Below, piece after piece: positions 5,901-61,013 of a DNA stretch of 64,000 nt (the first letter of the stretch is position 1; each line of letters begins with the position of its first letter). Below the pieces are notes generated by a model. The model was not told where the DNA came from. It saw only the letters and a list, made by a program, of their open reading frames with translations, and searched no databases. Position numbers and translations under genes: made by a program. The DNA lies in assembly GCA_021613535.1 (NCBI GenBank), contig CP075497.1:11284001-11348000 (forward strand), given 5' to 3'. The stretch is from Adineta vaga (taxonomy: Eukaryota > Animalia > Rotifera).

Positions 5901-8900
5901 TAAGCTGTTTTCAAGACATGAAAAAATTAGTTGAAATTTTTCGTAGACATACATAATTTATAATGACCATTGGGTTGAATTAATGTATTTTCTTTATACC
6001 ATACAACTCTTGCTTTTGGATAACCTTGATCAAGTTTACATTTCAATGTTAACGATGAACCTTCATAAACATCTGTATCAGTAAATTCTGTAATGATACT
6101 TGGGGGATGAAACGTTCGTTTATTATCTATATGAAAGAAGACGATAATATTGTATTAGTTTCCAATGAAAAAATGACTTACCTTTGACATATAGTTTCGC
6201 TATATCAACATTTTGTGCTTTATCATTGGCAATAACACATAGATAAGCTCCTTCATCTTCTTTACGAGTAGAAAATATTTTTAAATAATGATATGAATCA
6301 TCATGACTTAATTGATATTTTTCATCGTTATTAATTTCATCATCAGTACCAAAACGAAACCAAAATACATCAATTGGTTCGGTACCTTGAACTTTCGTTT
6401 TAAATCTTGCGGTTTCACCATGACGTGATGTTGTATCTTTCGGTCGTAGGATGAATTTAGGATCTGTAATCGATGGATCCATACGAAATTTATCTTCATC
6501 AATAAATGGTTTCATTTCTGTAGAACTTATATTCGATGTTGACGTTATAGAGTCGTTATCGGATTCATAAGTATAAGAAGGTCGTCGAAATGAACAAGAA
6601 GAATGATTTTGTAGAAGAAGATTGGCAGGTAGAGGAAATAATTTTCGATTAGCTGTTGAATCGTTATCACTTATTTGAGAATGTTCACCAAATGTGATTG
6701 TATTTATTGGAATTGGATAGGATAAAGATGCATCATCAGCATATAAATCATCATCAGCAAGATCTTCAAGAGGTCTTTTGAAAAGAGAAACGTTGAATTT
6801 TATGAATAAAAGACTAGTTGATCTTACTTATCACCAATACGAGGACTTAAATCTTTGTTTTCAGAATTTGGGAGTGTAAGGTATACAGCTTCGCGAGTAC
6901 TACGTGGTGTGTCGTCTCCGGAATGTGAAGACTAACAAAAACAAAGTTTGTACAACTTTCGTATTTGTTTCAAATGAAAAAAGAAGTTTACCTTTGATTC
7001 AATTAACGTAAAATTTGTTTGCCATTCACCAACTTTGGCTTTCGATCTTTTGATTGCTTCTAAATCTGAGTCAATAGAACGTCGATTATAATGTCGATTA
7101 GATGTTTCATCATCAATTGAACTTAAATCTAATTTGAGACCATTATCGAATTCAATACTTTCAGTTGTTGTTGGTAGTGCTTGTTGTTTATTAGTACCGT
7201 TAGTTAAATGTTCATCATCATCATCTTCTTCTTCAATATCTTCTTTAATTGTATCTAAAACATAAGATTTTGCTTTCGTTAATGTTTAAATCGACTAGAC
7301 AAGTGTACCTTCTTCTTCGTCTGCTGCTGATCTTTTTGATACGATTACTTTACGAATATTATCGTTACGAGATTTGATCTATTTCATTGAACAATAACAT
7401 TAATGAGAAGAGAAAACAAAAGCTTTTTTCTAACCTCCCAAGATGCACTTGAAGAATTACTCCACGTTGGTTGAGAAAATGAAGGTTTTGTAAGTGAGGT
7501 TAACGATGATGATGTATTCGATGTTTGTCGTAAAGGTTTTGGAGGTGGCGGTGCTGACTATACAAGAAGAAAACGAATGTAAGATCAATAATATCAAATT
7601 TTCTTTTCTATTTACAACATCAATAACATCAGGTAATTCTTGAAAGATTTCTTTGCTCACACACTTGTCAAAAATAGTTTGTGCTAATTTTTGATCAAAA
7701 TTATTCGTATTGATAGATGAATTCGGTGCTGTTAATGTCTATATTATGGATAAAAAAACCGAATAATAAGAAGATTGATTGAAAAAAATGCAATACTTTA
7801 TGAAATTGTTGAAGATTCGTTTGAAGAACTTGTTCAGTTTGTTGAACTAATAGATTTTGTAAATCACGTTCATGTGTTGTATTTGTTTTTGTATTTGAAC
7901 CTGTAGAATTAAGAAGAACAGGTTCAAATGATTTCAATGATGATAAAATGCATGGTAAAATCAAAATCAAAACACTTGTGACAATCGCCACAAATGGAAT
8001 GGAAATAAGTATCGTTTGAAGTTCATATAAAACTTGTAAAACAGCTACGTAAGATATGAATAGTATAAGAAATCGTTTCATTGATCGATGATGATTTTGT
8101 AACGTTATTTTCTTAAGATTAGACATAAATTTATGGTAATAAACAACCATTGACACAATACATTCTCATTTTTTCTTCTTCTTCTTCTTCGTTTCGTGTC
8201 TTGAAAAAGGCCAAGAGAACAAAACGAAAGAAAAACAAATGACAATGAAAGAAAAAGTAGCAAATGAAGTGTGTGTATGTGTGTTGTGTTTTTTCGTCAA
8301 CTTCTACACCTGATTACAATTGAATCACGTTGAAAGTAAAAGAACTGTTTAAACTTCCCGTTATGATACATATTTTAACATCTTCTGCGAACTTAAATTT
8401 CTTCTTTTTGTTCTTTCGCTTTGTTCTTTTCGACGGCCTTGAACAATGCCGTATGTATTTATTCATATTTGCATACAGAGTAGGTTGCACCTTTTCTTCT
8501 TCTTAAGTAAATTATGTCTTGATATGACATCGAATATCAAAAAGAAAGATTCATTTATCAACCAGAAAAGAAAACAGACGGAGAAAAAGAATTAATATTC
8601 GTCAACTTACGCCGAAGAGGACCACTAAGAGCTACGCGAGCACGAGCAATTTCAGTTGTAAGTTGCTGTTGATGAGCCTTGAGACCTTCTTTACCTAAAT
8701 ATGTATAATGAATGAAATAAAACAAATGTCTGTTGATGTTAAAACTCAAAATTTTTATATCCAAAGAGAAAGAAATTCTTCTCGTTTTACAGTTATTTAG
8801 TCAAACAAAAAGAGAAACGATTTAGAGCTGTTTGAAATGATTAGATAGCATTTATATGAGCAATTAGCTCACCGCCTCGTCGTACGATTGTCGCAACTGA

Positions 8901-14145: not shown

Positions 14146-17100
14146 ATGCGACTCAAGACGAAAGCAGCCAAACGTCGTTCGATACCTTCAACATATCATG
14201 GTAAGTAAGTAAGATGAGCAAAAAATGTGTTAATCGACAGGAACAAATCTTGTTTGATAATAAATTAAGTACACATGTTGTTAATCCTCTCATTTACTGA
14301 AGATAGAAATCACGATTGACAAACATCAACATATCCTCCATTAACATGTGTGATACATTTTCATCTTTGAATTTCATTTTCCAAAAGTGTGAACGACATA
14401 CTCGCTTTTCGTTTCTTCTCTTCTTTTTTTTCAAGAATTATTCAAAACGTGTTACCGAATGCTTTTCTTCTTCATTTTTAAACTGACACATCAAACTTGA
14501 ATTTTAATGGAACCTTTATCTATTGAATAAACATAGCAACTTCATCAGTTCGTTTTTTCTTTATTCTCATACGCTCGAAACAAAAGATGAAATTGTCTCG
14601 AACATAAAACAATATATTTTGTTGGAGGGTAATATGAGTCTTTTGTCAGTCGTTTTATCTCATATACATACTTCACTCAACAGAGCCTATTATCTGTCCG
14701 TGATGATGATAGTTATGATTGAGAAGAAAAAAAATGGACAAATATTGACCTGTGTAGGTGTGTATACTTAAAAAAAAAATTCGAGATGTGCGCACATCGA
14801 AAACTTATCTCTTTTCTTTTTTCTTTACTACATATAAATATATAAATATATATATATATATGTCTGAATATTATCTTCATCCTGCGTATGTTGATTCAGT
14901 TGAGGATTACACACGATCATAAAAAAAGAGAACCCGAGAGAAAGCAGTGTCATATTTACGATATCTATCTATATTTCGACCTCTTCTGAATGAGGTGACA
15001 AGCTCTCAGCATGGATAATCATCGTCTGGAATGAGAGTAGAGAAATGAGACATGATGCCCTGTAGCGATGTCCAATTCTTTTGATTGAGAGAATAAGAGT
15101 CAGAAACGAAACAAAAACAGCAGCAGAAGCAATGCATCCGTTCGGGTGGAATCATCGTGAGAAAAGAACGAACGAACGAACGAACGAATGAAATATGTTG
15201 GCATCTCTCTTTCTTTCTTTTCTCCTTTATACAGGTGAGAGCGAAAGAGAGAGAGAGGGAGAGAAAGCAAATCATAGAAAAGATAAAAATTCATTCGATG
15301 ACAATCTCATGTCATTCACCATCTATCATTTGAATAAGAAAAACGACAGTAAGTTAGTGATTTTCATTTTTGACAGACAATCTTCATCTTTTCCTCAATA
15401 AGATGCACATTTTTGTAGGTAGCAGCCGGGGCACCAAATGTCTGAGACACTCGGTCGGCTCATTATCATTCATATTTTTTCTTGTTGTTAAAAAACGATC
15501 GAGAGATTTTTATTTGATTTCTTTGAATCATAGGTGGACGTATCACTAAAGTGCTCATTGATGGATAATGAGTTCATTTTATCGATGTGTGAAATTTGAT
15601 TTGTATTTTTTCATTTTTAGAATCCTCAAGTGAACGAATGATTATGAAATGTACAAATGTTATTCAACAAGACGATCAAGAATCTGATGACGATAATCAA
15701 GACAGTAAGAAGAAAATCGTTGCTTTTTTTATTATTAAAACACGTGTTTGAACATCGATATGTATTTATTTTAGCGAATGAAATCATGCTAAAGAATGAA
15801 CAAAATGATCATCAACATAGGTAAAATAAACAAAATCATCTTCGCCTTCGGATAGAAATTGTTTTTTTCTCTTCTTAATTAGTGAAATATATTGAATAAG
15901 TAGATAAAAACGAATAGAGAGTGTGATGTTTTAATATACTGAAAAGGCAACTAAAAAGAGAGAGAGAGAGAGAGAACAGAGAGGACTCGAGAAACAAGTG
16001 TGCGTCTTTTTCTTTCACGAGCGATTCATATTTAATCAGTCAAACTTTAATTTTGTGAATGTATGTCGTTCGACAACTTCCGAGCCGAGTAAACAATGGA
16101 GAAAAAAAACTGAGAATGTTTGAATTACATCTGTGTCTTTTTTAGAATGTATGACCGTCCTGACATGATTATCAATGGTACAAACTCAACTAATACTTCG
16201 AATTCAAGTGAAGCAAGTGAATGTGAAAATCGTCTCTATTCATGTCATGATTGTGGAAAAAGTTTCCAAACATCATCTGGTTTAAAACAACATAGAAATA
16301 TTCATTCAAGTGTTAAGCCATGGAAATGTGAAGTAAGAAAATTTGATTTCTTTGAAATTTTTTTAAAAAGAAATTTTCTTCGAACTATTTAGTTCTGTAC
16401 AAAATCTTATACACAATTTTCCAATTTATGCCGTCATAAACGTTCACATGCCAACGCTCGAACACAAATTGAATGTAAAGATTGTGGTCAATCATTTCAA
16501 AGTCATGTTGCATTGAATAAACATCGGTAATTTAGCAACAAAAGAAAAAAAAACTGATTAAGATAAAATTTCTCTTGTTATTGTTCTTGTAGAAGTTCAT
16601 GTAAAGAACGGCATATTTCATCAACAATGGTTCCACCTAATTTAGTTGCACTACTTCCATTTATTGATGCTTCATCGTTATTAAATCGAACAAAAAAAGT
16701 TGAAATATCAGTATCACCTAATGAACCAATTGATTTAACAAAATCATACAAACGTTCTAGACAATCATCGGACGATCAACCAATTGATTACTCGATCATA
16801 CATAAAAGAAATGATTTCAATTCTCAACATATTTCACATGTATTTGGTAATGAAAAACAAGAGAAAAAGTTTAAAAAAGAAGAAGATCAATATTATGAAC
16901 AACAAATCAATGGTGAAGATGATGATGACGAAGAAGAAGAAGAAGATGATGAAGATGAAGATGACGAACATTTAATATCAATGGGAAATAAAAAACTAAA
17001 AGAATTTGATGATCATAGACCATTGACACCAATTTCATCGTCATCAAGTCCTCAAACGATTTCATCGTTGGAAAAAAAAGCCTTTTTATCAACCAATGAT

Positions 17101-18035
17101 TCAACTCTTATTCGAAGCAAAGATCGATATTCTTGTACTTATTGTGCCAAAACATTTCCACGTAGTGCCAATCTTACACGACATCTTCGAACTCATACAG
17201 ATAAGTATTCTAATTACCCGCACTCTTAACAGATTCTTTTTGATTGGAAGAGAAACATTCTATCAATAAGGAAAACTTCTCTCATTGAGATTAGTGAATG
17301 ATACTTAGATTTCATTATGTTTAACATTTGCATGAATGAGTTGTCACAGTTCATTCAAGAAGATGATAGTTTTAAGAGCTAATTATATTGAAATATTCAT
17401 TTCAATGAGATGAAGTGTTCAATAACACCAGCTGATATCGAGAGAATTGTGTCAAATCAGTATGAGATGAATGATCATTTCGTTGCTTCATCATTTCTGA
17501 CAGATGTTCTCAGACTAATCAATAGAAAAATTCTAATCTTTGTTTTTGTTTTTGTTTCTTTTTACGAGAACAACCGTATGTATGCAAATTTTGCAATCGA
17601 AGTTTTTCAATTTCATCCAATTTACAACGACATATACGAAATATTCATAAACGTGAACGACCATTTCGTTGTACACATTGTGATAAATGTTTTGGTCAAC
17701 AAACAAATCTCGATCGACATATGAAAAAGCATTTATCTCAATCATCACCATCTTCATCTTTATTAACACAATATGAACGAAATGCAACAAGTTCATCATC
17801 ACAAATTCCATACCTTTCATCCATATCATTGGCATCATTTCATCCAAATGCCAATGAAAATTTACCACAAAATTCTACTGATGACGAAGATACAAGTGGA
17901 TTATCTGAAGACGATGAAGAAGATGAAGATATTGATGTTGAAGAAGAAGATGAGGAGGATTTAGAAACCAATTCTTTATCAATTGACGGTACGGATGAAA
18001 TAGGCCAACAACAAGCGACATCATCTTCAACATAA
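14146..18035 (+). CDS. MECOM/EVI1-PRDM16/hamlet/EGL-43 family zinc-finger transcription factor (3+3 fingers; no PR domain seen)
   Basis: Exons 14146-14200, 15621-15704, 15775-15820, 16146-16332, 16393-16526, 16593-17200 and 17566-18035 are phase-compatible. Family-diagnostic fingers: [70 protein letters not shown]. CtBP-type motifs PIDLT and PIDYS; acidic tail. The N-terminus [11 protein letters not shown] resembles MRSKGRARKL. Confidence 0.92.
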
Positions 18036-35748: not shown

Positions 35749-36097
35749 AAAGTGTTGCTCTGGCAGATCAGTGTTGCCACCATTCCGCACGATTTCGTCA
35801 TCGCAACATGTATTCTCTCCGTAAGAATTTTTACCTCTTGGTAATTTGTAATAAGCAATTTATCTTCACGACTTGTGAAGCACGACATCTACACTGTCTC
35901 TACACTTTGCACTTTTCGTTTGCTTCCTCGAAAACAATAGATGTAGAGACAAGAAAAACGTCTTGCTTCGCACCTCATCTAGACAAGTTGCTTATTACAA
36001 ATTACCAAGAGGTAAAAATTCTTACGGAGAGAATACATGTTGCGATGACGAAATCGTGCGGATCGGTGGCAACACTGATCTGCCAGAGCAACACTTT
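35749..36097. mobile_element. Foldback/MITE-like palindromic element, 349 bp
   Basis: The left arm 35749-35858 is the reverse complement of 35988-36097 with about 2 mismatches. Imperfect pairing continues inward to about 35904/35942. Higher GC than the flanks, no transposase, no clear target-site duplication. Confidence 0.8.
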
Positions 36098-49314: not shown

Positions 49315-50449
49315 ATGTGTGGAAAACTTCTTCTATTTGAAATTCTCCTAATCATTTATAATTTCTATTTATGCAATGCATCTATTCGTGGTACACGTGA
49401 TCAGGTAGTACGAAAACTACATTGAAAAATCAATGTCTTTTATGTTTTGAATGTCTATAGATTGTTCTTGCTAATTTCAAAGCACAATTATCAAAAGCTC
49501 GAACAATAAAGCAAGCTCTTGCTATTTATGCTGATTCAAGTGTTAATAACAAACATCAAGTAGCTATGCAAAGTATTGTTTCAATTGAAGAAGATTTATG
49601 TATACAATTATGTCTTCTTTTTTCATTAGCGGATATTCGTAAACTCGAAAAAAACATCGATACACAACTTGTTAATTTGGGAATACAGAAAGGTTGATTA
49701 CATATAAACGCATTTTTCTTTCTAATGAGTCTTTTCCTAGATGATGAAACTGTTCCATATGTGAATGGTGGTTGTTTACCTCGTATTACATGTGTTCCTG
49801 TTTATGATCAACAAGTAGCTGCAGGTGGAATTATTTTTCCCAATTGTGTTGAAGTTCATCGATGTTCTGGTTGTTGTCAAGAAACACAATTTTCATGTGA
49901 ACCAACAAAAATCGAATATCTTTCATTTAGTCCTGTAAATAATTTCTTATCTATTGATTTGGTTTTTCAACAAAACTAGAATTTTTCAATATTTAGATCA
50001 TTAAATTCGAACAAGGTGAAGAATCAAATCTACCCATATCTGCATTAAAACCTTTCAAAACTGAAAATCATACTGAATGTACATGTAAATGTAAACTTGA
50101 TGAAAATGCTTGTCCAAGTAGTGCTCAAGTATGTTGGAAATCTTTGATGTTTGGTATATTTCAAAGAAATTATTTTAGGTTTTGGATCGTGAATTATGCC
50201 GATGTCGAGAACAAGCTTGTTTTCCTCAATGTCAAGCTATGCAACGTTGTCAATTGCTTAGTACACAAGAAAAACCATCATGTGTATGTAAACGACCAAT
50301 CCCAGGTCAAAATGGTGCTTATTCATGTTCGTCAGGTTATCAACCTGATGCTCGTTGCAAGTTAGTACATTATAAATCGATTAATCATTCTCTCTTATAT
50401 TTCAACAATTTGACTTTTTCTTTCTAGAAAATGTATGAAATACCCATGA
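49315..50449 (+). CDS. PDGF/VEGF-related ligand, copy A
   Basis: Signal peptide; cystine-knot CLPRITC...PNCVEVHRCSGCC...SCEPT...NHTECTCKC; Cys-rich tail. Confidence 0.92.
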
Positions 50450-50700
50450 AGATAAAAACAAAAGACAAATGGAAACTAGCTTTATTCTTTTTGACAATTA
50501 TTTGTTTGTATGATAAAATGTATAATACAGAAAAATAAATAAATTAATATGCGAAATATCATGAGTCAAAGAATGACAGCTGGCTTATCTATCATCAGCA
50601 AAGAGATTTATATATATATATATATACGTATGTAAGTAAGGGAAAATTCCCCATAGAAAAGATTGTATAAGAAAGATTTATTCGATAAAAAAAAGCAAAT

Positions 50701-51809
50701 ATGACAAAGATGCATTTGTTGATGGCATTTGTTTTTATTCTTTTGATTAATTCTATGAAATGTGATGAGGTAAGAATATTTATTTAATGAATTTCAATTT
50801 GATTTGGAAATATTTAGAATAAAAATCGAGCTGAAATTCGTGCGCGATTGGCAAAAGTCAGATCCCTTGAAGAAGCATTGCTTATTCTCAAATCTTCGGG
50901 CAAAAAAGGTCGAATGTGTATGTAAAGAAATATTTGAATCAAATAGGTACGAATCTTTCTTTCTTTTAGCAATGATTACTCCAGATGTACTGAGAAAAGA
51001 CATGGACAATATTCTTACGACTGCACGAAAACTTAATCGAAGTATACAGATCGATTTTGTTGATTGTATCGTTTAAGATGAGATTTTGTTTTCTAGATGG
51101 TCGATTAGCTATTATGCCACGAAATGGTGGATGTGAACCACGTGTTATATGTGAACCAGTACCTGTCGATCGTTCATCAGGAGATAATCTCGTATCTGTT
51201 CCGCAATGTCTTGAAGTTCATCGATGTGGTGGTTGTTGTCAAGAAGGTCAATTTACTTGTGCACCCGTTGAAGAAAAACCAGTAACATTTAGTCCAGTAA
51301 ATTGAATAGAATTTTCAAATTTATTTCGATTGAAACTATTCTTTTTGTTTTATTTAGCTTTTATTAGTCTCTTTGGATGATACTGACAATGTGGAAGTCA
51401 ATCGTCCATTGACATTAATGAATCATACAAAATGCGAATGTAAATGTAGTAAAACAGAAGAACAGTGTCAACGAGAAGGCAAAGTAAGTTTAGAAATTTT
51501 ATCGACGAAATTCAAAATACAATTTTATTTACTTTTTAGGTATTAGATTATACATTATGTCAATGTATTCAACCACGTTGTACACCTGAATGTCTTATAT
51601 CAGCTACATGTTCAATGATACCTGGAAATAGTGAACCACGATGTACATGTCGTCGACGTTTACAAGGACAATCAAGTAACTATTGTGCAAGTGCCAATCA
51701 ACGACCAAATGCAATGTGCACGTAAGAAAGAAAACTTTTTATATAACAAAATATCAATAATAAGATGATTCTCTGTTGTTTTAGACGTTGCGAAACGGTT
51801 TCTGGTTAA
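50701..51809 (+). CDS. PDGF/VEGF-related ligand, copy B (tandem paralog)
   Basis: Signal peptide; CEPRVIC...PQCLEVHRCGGCC...TCAPV...NHTKCECKC; Cys-rich tail; exon layout like copy A. Confidence 0.92.
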
Positions 51810-52130: not shown

Positions 52131-55100
52131 CTATTGATTTTCTTCATTTAGATTTGTTGTTGATGTTGATGGCCGTCGACTATCATTCTGAACAATCATA
52201 GTTGGTGTTTCTGGTCGTGAACGTAATCGAACTCGTCGTCTATAACGTTTAGCACCACCACCCATCGTGCCCAACCAACGAGGTGTTACATGTGAAGCTT
52301 TTCTTCTTCGAGGTTTTGTATTACTGGATATTGAAGTATGAGAGCCGTCTGTAGTTGTCGTTTCTTAAAATAAATAAAAAGTAATTGCTGACTAAAAAAA
52401 ATAATTGTAGTTACCATTTTCATCATCATCATTATCATCATCGTCATCATCATCATCTTCGCCTTTGGTTGGATCACGTACACGTGTAATTAATTCTGCA
52501 AGATCAATAAATTGCGTTGCAGTTGATTCTTGTTTACGCTAAATGAAACATTTAAATATAAAAAATTCTATGAATAAGCTTTTTTTGTTACAAGTCGTGT
52601 TTGTTTTTCTCTTGTTGATTGAAGTTTTTGTTTGAGAAAAACAACATCATATGATTCCAATTTCGACCACCCATGAAAAACAGCTTTACCATGATGATAT
52701 CCAACATCCTACAAGAATAATTCAGTGTCATATTCGTTCATAATCTCAATTGAATCAAAACAAACTCGAATCTCATCAAATGCATTAAACTGTAATGTTC
52801 GATATCGATCAATTGGTGGACGTAAATATTCACAAAAATTAGAATTCTTTACTATTTCTAATTGTCTTTGACATGAAACATAGGCTAAACGTGTTTGAAT
52901 TTCACTCAATTCAGGAACTTTTACTGGTGTTGACCAAATATTCCAACGTTTATATAAAAGCCACCAACCTAAAACATCGATATTTCTTTGTCAAAATTGA
53001 CTCTTTTTGTTCTTCTCTTCCTACCAGACAATTGATCACCAAAATTATAGAAATTCTGTTCATCTTGCGCACCAACATCAACAGCAATGACTGTATGAGC
53101 ACCGAGTTTATACATAACATCAGCTAGAAGAAAGAAATCATATATTTCAATATGGCACAGTACATAGATTCCTGGACAGTTTTATTTTCTTTTCCAAAAA
53201 AGTAAATTTCACTGTATTCTTAATTTCTATCGAGCAATTACTGTGGAATAGATTACACTCAGTTACATGAATAACATCGATCAAAACGAGCATATCTTAC
53301 CGGGTAAATTATTTACATATCCACCATCAAGTAATAAATGTCCATCATTTGGATCACATAATCTAACAGATCGAAAAAATGTATTTGTACTTAATCGATA
53401 ATCGATGAAAATAAAAATGAAATTAACTTACGGAGGAAAATAACCTGAAAGACTCATGGATGCTCTCACGTATCGCCACAATGATCCTAGATTTATATAA
53501 TTAAGAAAATCTCATTAATAAAGACACAAACAACATTCAAAGAAAAAGATCACTCGAGAAAAAAGACGTATATTGTGTGCGCGAAAACTGTCCAGGAATC
53601 TGTCAAATAAAATCAATTTAAATGATTGAATTCATCATTTTGTTTTGTTTATTCGGAAACCTTACCAGGTAGATTGTTCATATAACATCCATCTGAATAA
53701 AAACAAAAAATAAATGTATCAAATTTCTTCTCATATTCTTTACGAAGTTGAAATTTCATTCGAGAATGTCTCACCTAAAAGAAGATGTCCATCGTATGGA
53801 TCACACATAGGTGGAAGATAACAACCATAAGTCATTGATGCACGTACATAACGCCAAGCACTTCCTGTAGAGAAAATATCGGCATTCTCGTATTCTTGCA
53901 ACAATATACGTCTTTTTTCGTCGGTTTCTTTGTTTTTGTTTTGAAGAGAGAAGGAAAAGAAGAATAAAGTTTACCTGTCGTATGTACACGCATCTTTGAT
54001 GCAGATATATCTGTTGTTATACAAAAATATGGAATCCATAGATCTTCGATTTGAACATCGAGAAGTGCTTCTTCAATTGTTTCATTAAATCCAGCTCCTA
54101 TATAAAAATCCCAACAATTTGACTCTTTTCTTTCAACATAGAAAACATCATCAAATTCTTTCCTTACCAGTAAACATACTAGTAATTGGATATGTTAAAT
54201 CAACTAATTTCCTCCAGAAAGATTGCATTTTCTATAAGTAACAAAATTAATTCATAGAAAATGAACATATAAGAATAATTACTTTGCACCATTCTCGTGC
54301 TCGTTCAATATAACCTTTAATATTTAATTCATCTGCCCATAGAGCACCCATAAATGCTCCAATACTTGTTCCTCCAATCAGATCAATCGGTATACCAGCT
54401 TCATTCATCGCTTGAATTATTCCAACATGAGCACAACCACGAGCTCCACCTCCACCCAAAACAAGGCCAATTGCTGTTCCAGTTAGAAAACGTGCCATAC
54501 GAGCAAAATCAGTTGTTGGATCAGGATCTGGATCAAGTAAATCGGTATAATCATTCTAAATAGTAAGATAAATCTTTCCTGTCAAAGGAAGAAAACGAAA
54601 ACATTCAACATACCCAACATTCTAAATTTACACGTTGAAAAACACGATCGGGACATCGAACATGATGATGAAATGTACACCAATTACGTTCTTTTAACCA
54701 TTGAGCAGTACCCTTTGGTTTTAAACTACCCATACGATGCAAAAGAATCAATTCTTTCTGTGCTCGAACTGCTATTCGTTCAATTTCATTTTCAACCTAT
54801 GTATAAAAAAAGAAATGTTATTTTTTCTTCTTCAAATAGAATATAATTCGTATGTAAAAACTCACAGATCCTTTCACTGGTTCTTTCCATCCAATGCCAA
54901 CAATAAGAATACAATCTGCTTGTCGAAGCGATCGTTTTGTCCACGGTGTTAATTGTTTATCACATTGATACACAACAATTTTATGTAATTCTTCTTGTTG
55001 ACCAAGCCATGCACTTAGACGATAATCATTAATACTTTCAAATGCACTATCACCAAAGCGATCCATAATTAATTGTTGAGTTAAATGAAGTGTTGGACCT

Positions 55101-59044: not shown

Positions 59045-61013
59045 TTATTTTCGTTCATAGAATAACACATAAGCATTCGAGGAGACGATTTTCGTTTCGT
59101 TACTAATTGGATGAACAGATGAATCATTAAATTCATGCCATTCATGAGTAAATGGATGTTTACATTCAGCGACATAATGACCAGTATAAAGTGAACCACT
59201 ATGATTTGAGATACCGAACAGATTGTATGTTGGTGATGGGTCTAAACGATTGGGAAAGTCATATACGGACAAAAATAAGGACGAAGAATAACAAACTTTC
59301 AGAACTTTCTGACATGAAATCCGTAAGTTCGAGATTTTGAATTGGAAAATCGACAAAATTATTGAGTTTTCCCCTTCCGAAAGATTGTGTAAAACGTTTG
59401 AGATGAAGGACAAGAATTTCCGGACATTTTTGAATTGAAAGTTGCTTTGTACATGGACGTTTTTGTTTACATTTAGCACACATCTAAAATAGTAGAACAT
59501 CTATGAAATAAAATCCAAATTTTCCTTTGCTTACAGGTTTTTCATCACCATCAAGTTCTTCTCTACTCATAAATAATTGAAAACACTCTTGTAAAGTTGT
59601 TGATGATTTATTCTAGAAAATAAACTTGTTCAAAAGATTTCAAATTCTATTGATACTTTACACGTGGTAAAGGTATTGATAAATCCCAAAACATGTCAAA
59701 TGTTATCGATTGATATTGACAATAGGAACATTCCAAAGTACTTTTTAATTGTCCAGCAAAAATATCTTGATAAAACGAAACAAATTAATTGATATAGAAA
59801 TAAAATAAATTCGAATTAAACATACCAACAAGTTGACTATTCTCGTATCGTAAACATCGTTGCCAACTTGCTTTAGCTCGATCGATTTCTCTAGAAATAA
59901 AACACTTTCATCTAATTTAAACATCGAAATAAATAACGATCTTTTACTTCATTCGTTCTTCTTGTTTTTCATCAACTTTAATCAGTACTGGTTTTTCTCG
60001 TATTCGATTAACATCTTCACTTAAACCTTGCAAGAGATAACGTAAGAATTCTTGTGAATCTTGTTCTCTAGAAATACAAGAAAAACACACTGAATGGATC
60101 AAATTCAATCAAACTTTGTACATACGAATAACCAGTAAAACGTGGAGCAAATTTTCCAATCGTATTTTTGAATGATGATGGACTAACAATCGATCGATTT
60201 TCTGACGGTAACCACATCTTACGAATTAAACTAGCATATTCTAAAGCATATGAAATGACATATAAATTTAAAAAATAAAGAGAATGTTTGACACAAACCT
60301 TTCATTAACACTCCTTTCATAACACTCGTTGTTGATGTATTCAATTGATTTTCAAGCTTATCATCCAAACAATATAATAAAAGAGGTTTTGTATTAGATA
60401 AACATTGAAGCACCGAATTCATAAAACACTAGAAAATAAATTATACAACATATATATATATATCCATGTGAAAGAGAAATATTTTACTGTATTTCCAAGA
60501 TTCTGTAATCCACATAAACCACCATTTTTTAAATCTAGTTCATTAGTTGTTGCTATCACTGATGATTTTGAAGTTGTAGATTGATTATTTGAATAACTTG
60601 TTTTTTGATTTGGAGTTGATGCTATACTATAAACAGTCACTGTAGGATTTATTGTCAATTGTTCTTTATAATCATGAGTAGTTCCATTTGTTTGAACATT
60701 CTAAAGAGATAATAGTTTCAATTGAATAATCATATACAAAACATACTGATCGATCTTGACTTGATAATCGTGTTCGTTGGAGAGTTGTTTGAATCGGTCG
60801 TTCAGTTGAAGGTTGAGTGAATCGACTTGGTTGTCTTGTTCGAGTATTACTTCCATTGGAGATATTCATACTACCTGAATTGATAGATTTTGCAATTGCT
60901 GCAACATTTGTTGTTGTTAGGGGTGGCATTGGACGTGATGTTGTATTGTAACTATTCGAATGAGTTGATGACGAAGGTATTGGTATACCATAGTTAGTTT
61001 TTGGTCGACTCAT
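59045..61013 (-). CDS. Ubiquitin-specific protease, USP2/USP21-like
   Basis: Cys box GLQNLGNT|CFMNSVLQCL, QDSQEFLRYLL, LVLHLKRF, His box NHSGSLYTGHY, WHEFNDS, AYVLFYE; Ser/Thr-rich N-terminus. Confidence 0.93.

What the first reader, a model, noticed from the sequence alone, without database searches (positions are those of the whole stretch)
53166..53919. Interleaved intronic RNA pairings forming a putative bistable switch for mutually exclusive splicing in NTE/sws
Seen: on the pre-mRNA the order is element I (53919-53901), cassette A, element II (53601-53584), element I' (53576-53558), cassette B, element II' (53183-53166). I:I' is a perfect 19-bp duplex, extendable with bulges, that loops out cassette A. 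II:II' is a perfect 18-bp duplex that loops out cassette B. The pairs cross (I-II-I'-II'), and II and I' are only 7 nt apart. The host introns are longer than the usual about 55 nt. Known: competing or bidirectional RNA pairings govern mutually exclusive exons in arthropod genes such as Dscam1. Inference: two crossing helices of nearly two turns each should exclude each other sterically, so exactly one two-exon cassette is included. I am not aware of this being described for NTE/sws or for this lineage.
Basis: partly seen in the sequence, partly recalled or inferred. Interest (0 to 1): 0.95.

Follow-up and report, generated by a model that had tools for sequence, protein, structure and literature searches.

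The report
RNA bridges choosing NTE alternative exons
Two pairs of matching intron sequences in the rotifer Adineta vaga's NTE/PNPLA6 gene are real and conserved across bdelloid rotifers. They most likely steer the choice between two alternative versions of the enzyme's catalytic segment, which makes this a well-supported new example of a mechanism already known from insect genes.

Summary
On the minus strand, a perfect 19-bp pair (I:I') and a perfect 18-bp pair (II:II') cross in the order I-A-II-I'-B-II'. No dinucleotide shuffle out of 2000 reached 16 nt, and both sequences are unique in the genome (Adineta vaga, chromosome 6).

Both two-exon cassettes (117 nt each) are intact and under purifying selection in nine bdelloid loci from Adineta, Rotaria and Didymodactylos. 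Apart from the 5' splice site, the only invariant intron blocks are the cores of I, II and I'. II' is conserved as well, at a fixed distance from the downstream acceptor. The helices show compensatory and G·U changes and lineage-specific extensions.

RNA-derived contigs show the B-only isoform as the main form. A minor A form also appears, but its last donor joins an acceptor inside element II and meets a premature stop. The predicted productive A junction was not seen, and neither was an A+B joint.

The architecture matches the "bidirectional RNA pairing" model published for Drosophila srp. The exon pair itself is the PNPLA6/sws mutually exclusive cluster already reported for human and fly. 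What is new is the RNA pairing for this gene and this phylum, plus the acceptor embedded in a selector. Steric bistability remains untested. The scan had not noted this before on other DNA.

The parts
53975..54096 (-). Constitutive upstream exon (patatin domain); its 5' splice site is at 53974
   Evidence: GT-AG joints 54096/54167 and 53974/53485, 53974/53863 in RNA contigs; translation matches NTE
53901..53919 (-). Element I (upstream docking site), 55 nt downstream of the upstream 5' splice site
   Evidence: Perfect 19-nt complement of I'; its core is the only invariant run in this intron across 8 Adineta/Rotaria loci
53926..53943 (-). Imperfect extension of helix I:I' (5' side)
   Evidence: pair I3; MFE helices 53941-53936/53533-53528 and 53932-53926/53544-53538
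53775..53864 (-). Cassette A, exon A1 (DGC-type variant)
   Evidence: Joints 53863/53974 and 53692/53775; open reading frame conserved in 9 bdelloid loci, pN/pS 0.21
53666..53692 (-). Cassette A, exon A2
   Evidence: Joints 53692/53775 and 53599/53666
53600..53665 (-). 66-nt GT-AG intron from the A2 donor to an acceptor AG that is the first two bases of element II (decoy/poison acceptor); contains a weak local hairpin
   Evidence: Joint 53599/53666 in runs X1 and X2; the frame then reaches a stop near 53551; the AG is GG in Rotaria socialis; hairpin
53584..53601 (-). Element II (upstream selector), 64-69 nt downstream of the A2 5' splice site in all Adineta/Rotaria loci
   Evidence: Perfect 18-nt complement of II'; 12-bp core invariant in 8 loci including Didymodactylos
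53558..53576 (-). Element I' (downstream selector), 55-73 nt upstream of the B1 acceptor
53527..53545 (-). Imperfect extension of helix I:I' (3' side)
   Evidence: pair I3
53432..53486 (-). Cassette B, exon B1 (DGG-type, canonical variant)
   Evidence: Joints 53485/53974 and 53362/53432 in X1, X2 and X5; pN/pS 0.05; this is the cassette in the annotated A. vaga protein
53301..53362 (-). Cassette B, exon B2
   Evidence: Joints 53362/53432 and 53123/53301
53166..53183 (-). Element II' (downstream docking site), 51-78 nt upstream of the downstream acceptor although this intron varies from 109 to 935 nt among species
53025..53123 (-). Constitutive downstream exon
   Evidence: Joints 53123/53301 and 52966/53023

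Best explanation
The region is the ancient mutually exclusive exon cluster of NTE/PNPLA6, here in Adineta vaga. Each alternative has been split into two small exons, and the choice is governed by two long-range intronic RNA helices arranged as in the 'bidirectional RNA pairing' model.

Helix I:I' loops out cassette A. It brings the upstream 5' splice site (about 55 nt from I) next to the B1 acceptor (about 70 nt from I'), which favours the B isoform. Helix II:II' loops out cassette B. It brings the A2 donor (about 65 nt from II) next to the downstream acceptor (about 55-65 nt from II') and hides an acceptor AG that lies at the start of II, which favours a productive A isoform. Each helix reduces a long exon-containing intron to an effective length the short-intron bdelloid spliceosome can handle.

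The two helices cross, and I is removed once the upstream-to-A1 intron is spliced, so only one route is taken per transcript. If A is included but II:II' does not form, the A2 donor uses the nearby acceptor in II. The transcript then carries a premature stop and is presumably degraded.

Shown here: the elements, their conservation and covariation, their fixed distances to splice sites, B-only and A-containing transcripts, and use of the acceptor in II. Inferred: that pairing causes the exon choice, that the helices exclude each other, and that the acceptor in II acts as a fail-safe.
For: Perfect 19- and 18-bp complements, far beyond chance and unique in the genome. Both cassettes are intact in nine bdelloid loci with pN/pS 0.21 (A) and 0.05 (B). 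The only invariant runs of 5 nt or more in the two introns, besides the 5' splice site, are the cores of I, II and I'. The II:II' 12-bp core is present in all 8 complete loci, including Didymodactylos, with different complementary extensions per lineage and two G·U one-sided changes in one Adineta. I:I' shows A-U in A. vaga where seven other loci have G-C, plus further two-sided changes at the helix ends. In Didymodactylos a different-sequence helix of about 20 bp sits at the same place. Distances from the elements to splice sites stay constant while the downstream intron varies 109-935 nt. The nested-fold ensemble splits 0.79/0.21 between the two helices. RNA contigs show upstream>B1, B1>B2 and B2>downstream joints, and upstream>A1, A1>A2 and A2>acceptor-in-II joints. 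They show no A2>B1 joint and no skipping of both cassettes. The layout is identical to srp exon 4, where disruptive and compensatory mutations shifted exon choice (PMC4691838; PMC6071210).
Against: No experiment or structure probing ties these helices to exon choice in rotifers. The helix cores are mostly invariant, so covariation rests on few positions, and I:I' has an internal mismatch in 5 of 8 loci. The productive A junction was not seen, so the A route may be mostly unproductive in the sampled conditions. That evidence comes from assembled contigs, which drop rare variants and give no quantities. The 0.79/0.21 split is forced by a folding model that cannot form pseudoknots, and a long-range pseudoknot with both helices is not excluded. 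Spacing between II and I' is about 125 nt in Didymodactylos, which weakens the steric-adjacency argument.
Confidence: 0.65

Rival explanations
1. The helices act only as 'intron bridges' that make two long exon-containing introns spliceable. They do not decide between the cassettes. Exclusivity would come from kinetics, splice-site strength, trans-acting factors and decay of mis-spliced RNAs.
For: Fixed distances from elements to splice sites despite 109-935-nt intron variation. In srp one helix worked mainly by approximation. Use of the acceptor in II gives a premature stop.
Against: Both bridges are conserved together in a crossing order in all lineages, which is what a choice device needs. 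Nothing tested here separates this reading from the main one.
Confidence: 0.17
2. The conserved blocks are binding sites for splicing regulators, and their complementarity is incidental.
For: The helix cores are invariant, as expected for protein-binding motifs.
Against: Two independent pairs of blocks are exact reverse complements. Changes are compensatory or wobble. Flanking extensions differ by lineage yet stay complementary. Didymodactylos keeps a helix with a different sequence.
Confidence: 0.07
3. Cassette A is a decaying or regulatory 'poison' cassette. Its inclusion always leads to the acceptor in II and a premature stop, lowering NTE output, and the helices tune that unproductive splicing.
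For: The only A-containing RNAs seen end in the acceptor in II; no A2>downstream joint was found.
Against: Cassette A keeps an open frame and pN/pS 0.21 in nine loci. It corresponds to the DGC-type alternative exon found from vertebrates to arthropods. The acceptor AG is lost in Rotaria socialis.
Confidence: 0.08
4. The inverted repeats are leftovers of the duplication or of a transposon, with no function.
For: Tandem exon duplication can create complementary intron copies.
Against: The elements are unique in the genome. They are conserved across Adineta, Rotaria and Didymodactylos while the surrounding intron sequence diverges.
Confidence: 0.03

Closest known systems
Bidirectional RNA pairing in Drosophila serpent (srp) exon 4 cluster (Yue et al. 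2016, PMC4691838); also Dscam exon 4 in Hymenoptera and exon 9 in Lepidoptera
   Same: Same order: upstream docking site, first alternative, upstream selector, downstream selector, second alternative, downstream docking site. Two non-overlapping helices cross like a long-range pseudoknot, and each brings splice sites together and activates one alternative.
   Different: Different gene and phylum (Rotifera rather than Arthropoda). Each alternative is a two-exon cassette with its own internal intron. The helices are short and perfect (18-19 bp) in a genome with very short introns. One selector begins with an acceptor that is used in vivo. No mutational evidence exists here.
PNPLA6/sws mutually exclusive exon cluster (Hatje et al. 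2017, PMC5740500 supplement; Hatje and Kollmar 2013)
   Same: Same position in the patatin domain, same 117-nt length and phase, and the same two variants (DGC-type and DGG-type around the catalytic aspartate).
   Different: No RNA-structure mechanism for this cluster was found in the searched literature. In rotifers each alternative is split by an intron at a different place. In arthropod gene models the order of the two variants is reversed.
Docking site/selector competition (Dscam exon 6, 14-3-3 xi, Mhc, MRP1)
   Same: Conserved intronic complements flanking tandem duplicated exons direct the choice of a single exon.
   Different: In those systems several selectors compete for one docking site. 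Here there are two separate helices with unrelated sequences, and cross-pairings are weak.
Vertebrate structure-controlled exon pairs (human ATE1, dynamin 1; recalled from memory, not checked here)
   Same: Competing or looping long-range intronic helices around a two-exon mutually exclusive cluster outside arthropods.
   Different: Those involve much longer introns and overlapping competing sites. No relation in sequence.

Membership tests
Bidirectional RNA-pairing control of mutually exclusive exons (srp type) | Tandem homologous alternatives of equal length and phase | tested here: met
   A and B are each 117 nt in the same phase, with 30/40 residues and 66% of bases identical
Bidirectional RNA-pairing control of mutually exclusive exons (srp type) | Upstream docking site pairs with a selector in the middle intron, looping out the first alternative | tested here: met
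   I:I', 19 bp perfect, extended to -43 kcal/mol; conserved
Bidirectional RNA-pairing control of mutually exclusive exons (srp type) | A second selector, upstream of the first in the middle intron, pairs with a downstream docking site, so the helices cross | tested here: met
   II:II', 18 bp perfect. The order I-A-II-I'-B-II' holds in all 8 complete loci
Bidirectional RNA-pairing control of mutually exclusive exons (srp type) | Conservation with compensatory change | tested here: met
   A-U versus G-C at one I:I' pair, G·U one-sided changes, lineage-specific complementary extensions, and a replaced helix in Didymodactylos. The number of covarying positions is small.
Bidirectional RNA-pairing control of mutually exclusive exons (srp type) | Transcripts contain exactly one alternative | tested here: inconclusive
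   B-only is seen in three runs. There is no A+B joint and no double skipping. The A form was seen only joined to the acceptor in II, not to the downstream exon (assembled contigs, not reads).
Bidirectional RNA-pairing control of mutually exclusive exons (srp type) | Exon choice depends on the pairings (disruptive and compensatory mutations) | not testable with these tools
   Needs minigenes or genome editing
Single docking site with competing selectors (Dscam exon 6 type) | Two or more selectors complementary to the same docking sequence | tested here: not met
   I/I' and II/II' are unrelated sequences. I with II' gives -9.8 and II with I' gives -18.3 kcal/mol, both only with long loops.
PNPLA6/sws mutually exclusive cluster | 117-nt, 39-residue alternatives at the catalytic-aspartate segment, one DGG-type and one DGC-type | tested here: met
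   human pair listed in the PMC5740500 supplement
Poison/decoy splice site coupled to mRNA decay | Use of the site introduces a premature stop and the product is decay-sensitive | tested here: inconclusive
   The junction is seen at low depth and an in-frame stop follows in A. vaga and the relatives read. Decay sensitivity was not tested.

The most novel reading that the evidence does not exclude
The two-bridge RNA architecture may be an ancestral part of the bilaterian PNPLA6/sws exon pair, not a bdelloid invention. The acceptor embedded in selector II may be a decay-coupled fail-safe. It would enforce exclusivity for alternatives whose joint inclusion stays in frame (117+117 nt) and so cannot be policed by a frameshift.
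Probability: 0.15. Interest if true: 0.7.

Novelty: new member of a known kind. Interest (0 to 1): 0.5.

Why it matters
NTE/PNPLA6 is a disease gene, and its alternative catalytic segment is one of only five exon clusters reported as shared between human and fly. How that choice is made has not been described in the literature I could search. Bdelloid rotifers offer an unusually compact version: about 850 nt, with 18-19-bp perfect helices. Here the published bidirectional-pairing model can be tested cleanly outside arthropods. The system also suggests how a short-intron spliceosome copes with skipping exons. The acceptor inside a selector suggests a simple link between RNA folding and transcript quality control.

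Tried and rejected
- **No second NTE copy.** A. vaga has none, either by DNA or by protein exon, so no within-genome comparison was possible.
- **Not a repeat family.** Pattern searches found no other copies of the elements, so a transposon or repeat-family origin is rejected.
- **No known RNA family.** Rfam gave no match.
- **Whole-intron RNAduplex scores** against mononucleotide shuffles were uninformative, because very long artificial duplexes dominate. I replaced them with anchored pair tables.
- **The local hairpin** between the A2 donor and II has only weak consensus support of -1.4 kcal/mol and is not relied on.
- **Didymodactylos copy 1 (L003)** has an assembly gap at the expected place of I, and its contig lacks II', so it was left out of the helix counts.
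- **Other phyla.** The Tribolium protein had no locus on record. An RNAduplex test on the stickleback locus timed out and was replaced by a run-length test.
- **Joined-exon searches left out.** I built no spliced (joined) model and did not search for the joined A2/downstream junction. The count of structure pairs was not used because it would have needed a very long typed structure string.

Full report
**What is there.** The window lies on chromosome 6 of Adineta vaga. The contig length of 13,893,210 equals that of the record carrying the annotated A. vaga NTE protein P0156. On the minus strand runs an NTE/PNPLA6-type gene with cNMP-binding, NTE P-loop and patatin domains in its relatives.

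Between the constitutive exons 54096-53975 and 53123-53025 lie two homologous cassettes. Cassette A consists of exons 53864-53775 and 53692-53666. Cassette B consists of exons 53486-53432 and 53362-53301. Each is 117 nt in the same phase, with 30 of 40 residues and 66% of bases identical. Their internal introns sit at different positions. Cassette B carries the canonical DGG catalytic-aspartate motif and cassette A carries DGC.

**The observation.** Both inverted repeats are exactly as described: I 53919-53901 with I' 53576-53558 (19 bp) and II 53601-53584 with II' 53183-53166 (18 bp), both perfect.
- None of 2000 dinucleotide shuffles of the 851-nt stretch gave a perfect inverted repeat longer than 15 nt.
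- Neither element has another exact copy in the genome, so they are not transposon ends.
- The 64-kb window holds only six inverted repeats of 15 nt or more within 1.5 kb, and these are two of them.
- I:I' extends with bulges to about -43 kcal/mol. With 25-nt flanks, II:II' reaches -31 kcal/mol.
- A nested-structure ensemble gives I:I' 0.79 and II:II' 0.21. This split is partly imposed by a model that cannot form both helices at once.
- Rfam finds nothing.

**Transcripts.** I laid assembled contigs from four runs on 52700-54600. They skip GT-AG introns throughout, so they derive from RNA.
- Three runs from two studies show upstream>B1, B1>B2 and B2>downstream. This is the B-only isoform, and it is also the annotated protein.
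- Two runs show A-containing RNA at lower contig depth, with upstream>A1 (one run) and A1>A2 (both runs).
- In both of those runs the A2 donor at 53666 is joined to 53599. This removes a normal-looking 66-nt GT-AG intron whose acceptor AG is the first two bases of element II. The reading frame then meets a stop near 53551.
Neither were A2>B1 (double inclusion) or upstream>downstream (double skipping).
- Contigs drop rare variants and give no quantities, so absence is weak evidence. The contig running through the end of A2 into II without a branch does suggest that this is the main A-containing form in those samples.

**Comparative evidence.** Through exon-wise searches and a database protein I fetched orthologous loci:
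- an Adineta from a metagenome (L004) and a partial Adineta (L005);
- A. ricciae (L008) and A. steineri (L009);
- Rotaria sp. Silwood2 (L010), R. sordida (L011) and R. socialis (L012);
- two Didymodactylos carnosus copies (L013, L003).

All nine loci that span the cluster (counting the window; the partial L005 stops just after cassette A) have both cassettes with open frames. Pairwise pN/pS is 0.21 for A and 0.05 for B. Cassette A is therefore a maintained coding alternative, not a decaying copy.

In alignments of the two introns, the only invariant runs of five or more bases apart from the 5' splice site are the cores of I, II and I'.

The II:II' core (12 bp, GATTCCTGGACA with its complement) is present in all eight complete loci, including Didymodactylos.
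- Its flanks pair differently in each lineage.
- One Adineta has two one-sided changes that keep G·U pairs on the sense strand.

I:I' has 13 invariant pairs in Adineta and Rotaria.
- One pair is A-U in A. vaga and G-C in the seven other loci.
- There are further two-sided changes at the helix ends.
- Five of eight loci have an internal mismatch.
- Didymodactylos copy 2 has a helix of about 20 bp with largely different sequence at the same place.

The distances are constant. I lies 43-57 nt from the upstream donor and I' 55-73 nt from the B1 acceptor. II lies 64-69 nt from the A2 donor. II' lies 51-78 nt from the downstream acceptor, although that intron ranges from 109 to 935 nt. The AG at the start of II is present in most loci but is GG in R. 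socialis, and the sequence after it is not conserved as coding. Pairing, not that acceptor, is therefore the conserved feature.

**Mechanism.**
- *Shown:* two conserved crossing helices, each placing one donor within about 120-145 nt of the acceptor that lies beyond the cassette to be skipped.
- *Inferred:* I:I' promotes upstream>B1 and II:II' promotes A2>downstream. Because I' is transcribed before II', and because I is lost once upstream>A1 is spliced, the choice is probably a race that usually favours B. When A is chosen and II:II' fails to form, the nearest acceptor (in II) is used and the RNA is non-productive.
- *Not tested:* whether the helices exclude each other sterically. In Didymodactylos, II and I' are about 125 nt apart, so close adjacency is not universal.

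**Comparison with what is known.** The order of elements is the same as in Drosophila srp exon 4, where Yue et al. showed by disruptive and compensatory mutations that two such pairings control the choice. They also discussed the possible long-range pseudoknot (PMC4691838; summarised in PMC6071210).

The exon pair itself is known. Hatje et al. list a 117-nt DGC-type candidate next to the annotated DGG-type exon of human PNPLA6, and they count PNPLA6/sws among five clusters homologous between human and Drosophila (PMC5740500 supplement). Most arthropod and vertebrate gene models retrieved here carry both copies in tandem.

I found no paper connecting this cluster with RNA pairing, and none on mutually exclusive exons in rotifers.

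**Verdict.** The finding is real and well supported as a conserved RNA-pairing device. It is a new member of a published kind, not a new kind. The new points are:
- the gene and the phylum;
- the two-exon cassettes;
- the short perfect helices in a short-intron genome;
- the acceptor embedded in a selector that is used in vivo.

**Rules.** Exons were searched one by one by reference. I made no joined spliced model and did not search for the joined A2/downstream junction.

Noticed in passing
L008, L010, L011 (gene models P0152, P0153, P0154): The deposited gene models of A. ricciae, Rotaria sp. Silwood2 and R. sordida include cassettes A and B in tandem. The A. steineri and one D. carnosus model contain part of A. 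Given the A. vaga transcripts, these are probably annotation errors.
   Followed up: partly
Proteins P0158-P0267: Nearly all arthropod and vertebrate NTE/PNPLA6 models in the hit list carry both 39-residue copies in tandem. Arthropods have the DGG type first, while vertebrates and rotifers have the DGC type first. This hints at a reordering of an ancient pair or at independent duplications.
   Followed up: partly
L014:13810-13826 with 15880-15896; also 15447-15461 with 17139-17153: In stickleback pnpla6, a 17-nt complement with one mismatch links the intron before the DGC exon to the intron after it, and no shuffle out of 40 reached that length. The best complement between the middle and downstream introns did not exceed chance. 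A weaker pair (15 nt, 87%) would complete the same crossing order; it was found only by the repeat scan and was not tested against shuffles.
   Followed up: partly
L003:7128-7265 with 7357-7494: A 138-nt inverted repeat (91%) lies in the intron downstream of cassette B in Didymodactylos copy 1. It looks like a foldback insertion, and the expected II' was not found on this contig.
   Followed up: no
window 35749-35858 with 35988-36097: A large inverted repeat (75 + 33 nt perfect arms, about 130 nt apart), unrelated to the NTE gene.
   Followed up: no
This layout resembles a docking site with several selectors, though the sequence is low in complexity.
   Followed up: partly
window 53997 and 53890: All four runs show T>A at 53997, in part of the depth in three of them (the only contig there in X6). 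One run shows G>A at 53890 in the intron between I and A1. These are probably allelic differences, and neither touches a helix.
   Followed up: no
window 53604-53655: A local stem-loop fills most of the 66-nt intron between the A2 donor and II. A similar hairpin exists in relatives but has weak consensus support.
   Followed up: partly
window 49725-51305 and 59045-59500: PDGF/VEGF-like cystine-knot genes lie downstream of NTE and a ubiquitin hydrolase upstream. The same neighbours occur in relatives, and in R. socialis the hydrolase is fused to NTE in the gene model.
   Followed up: no
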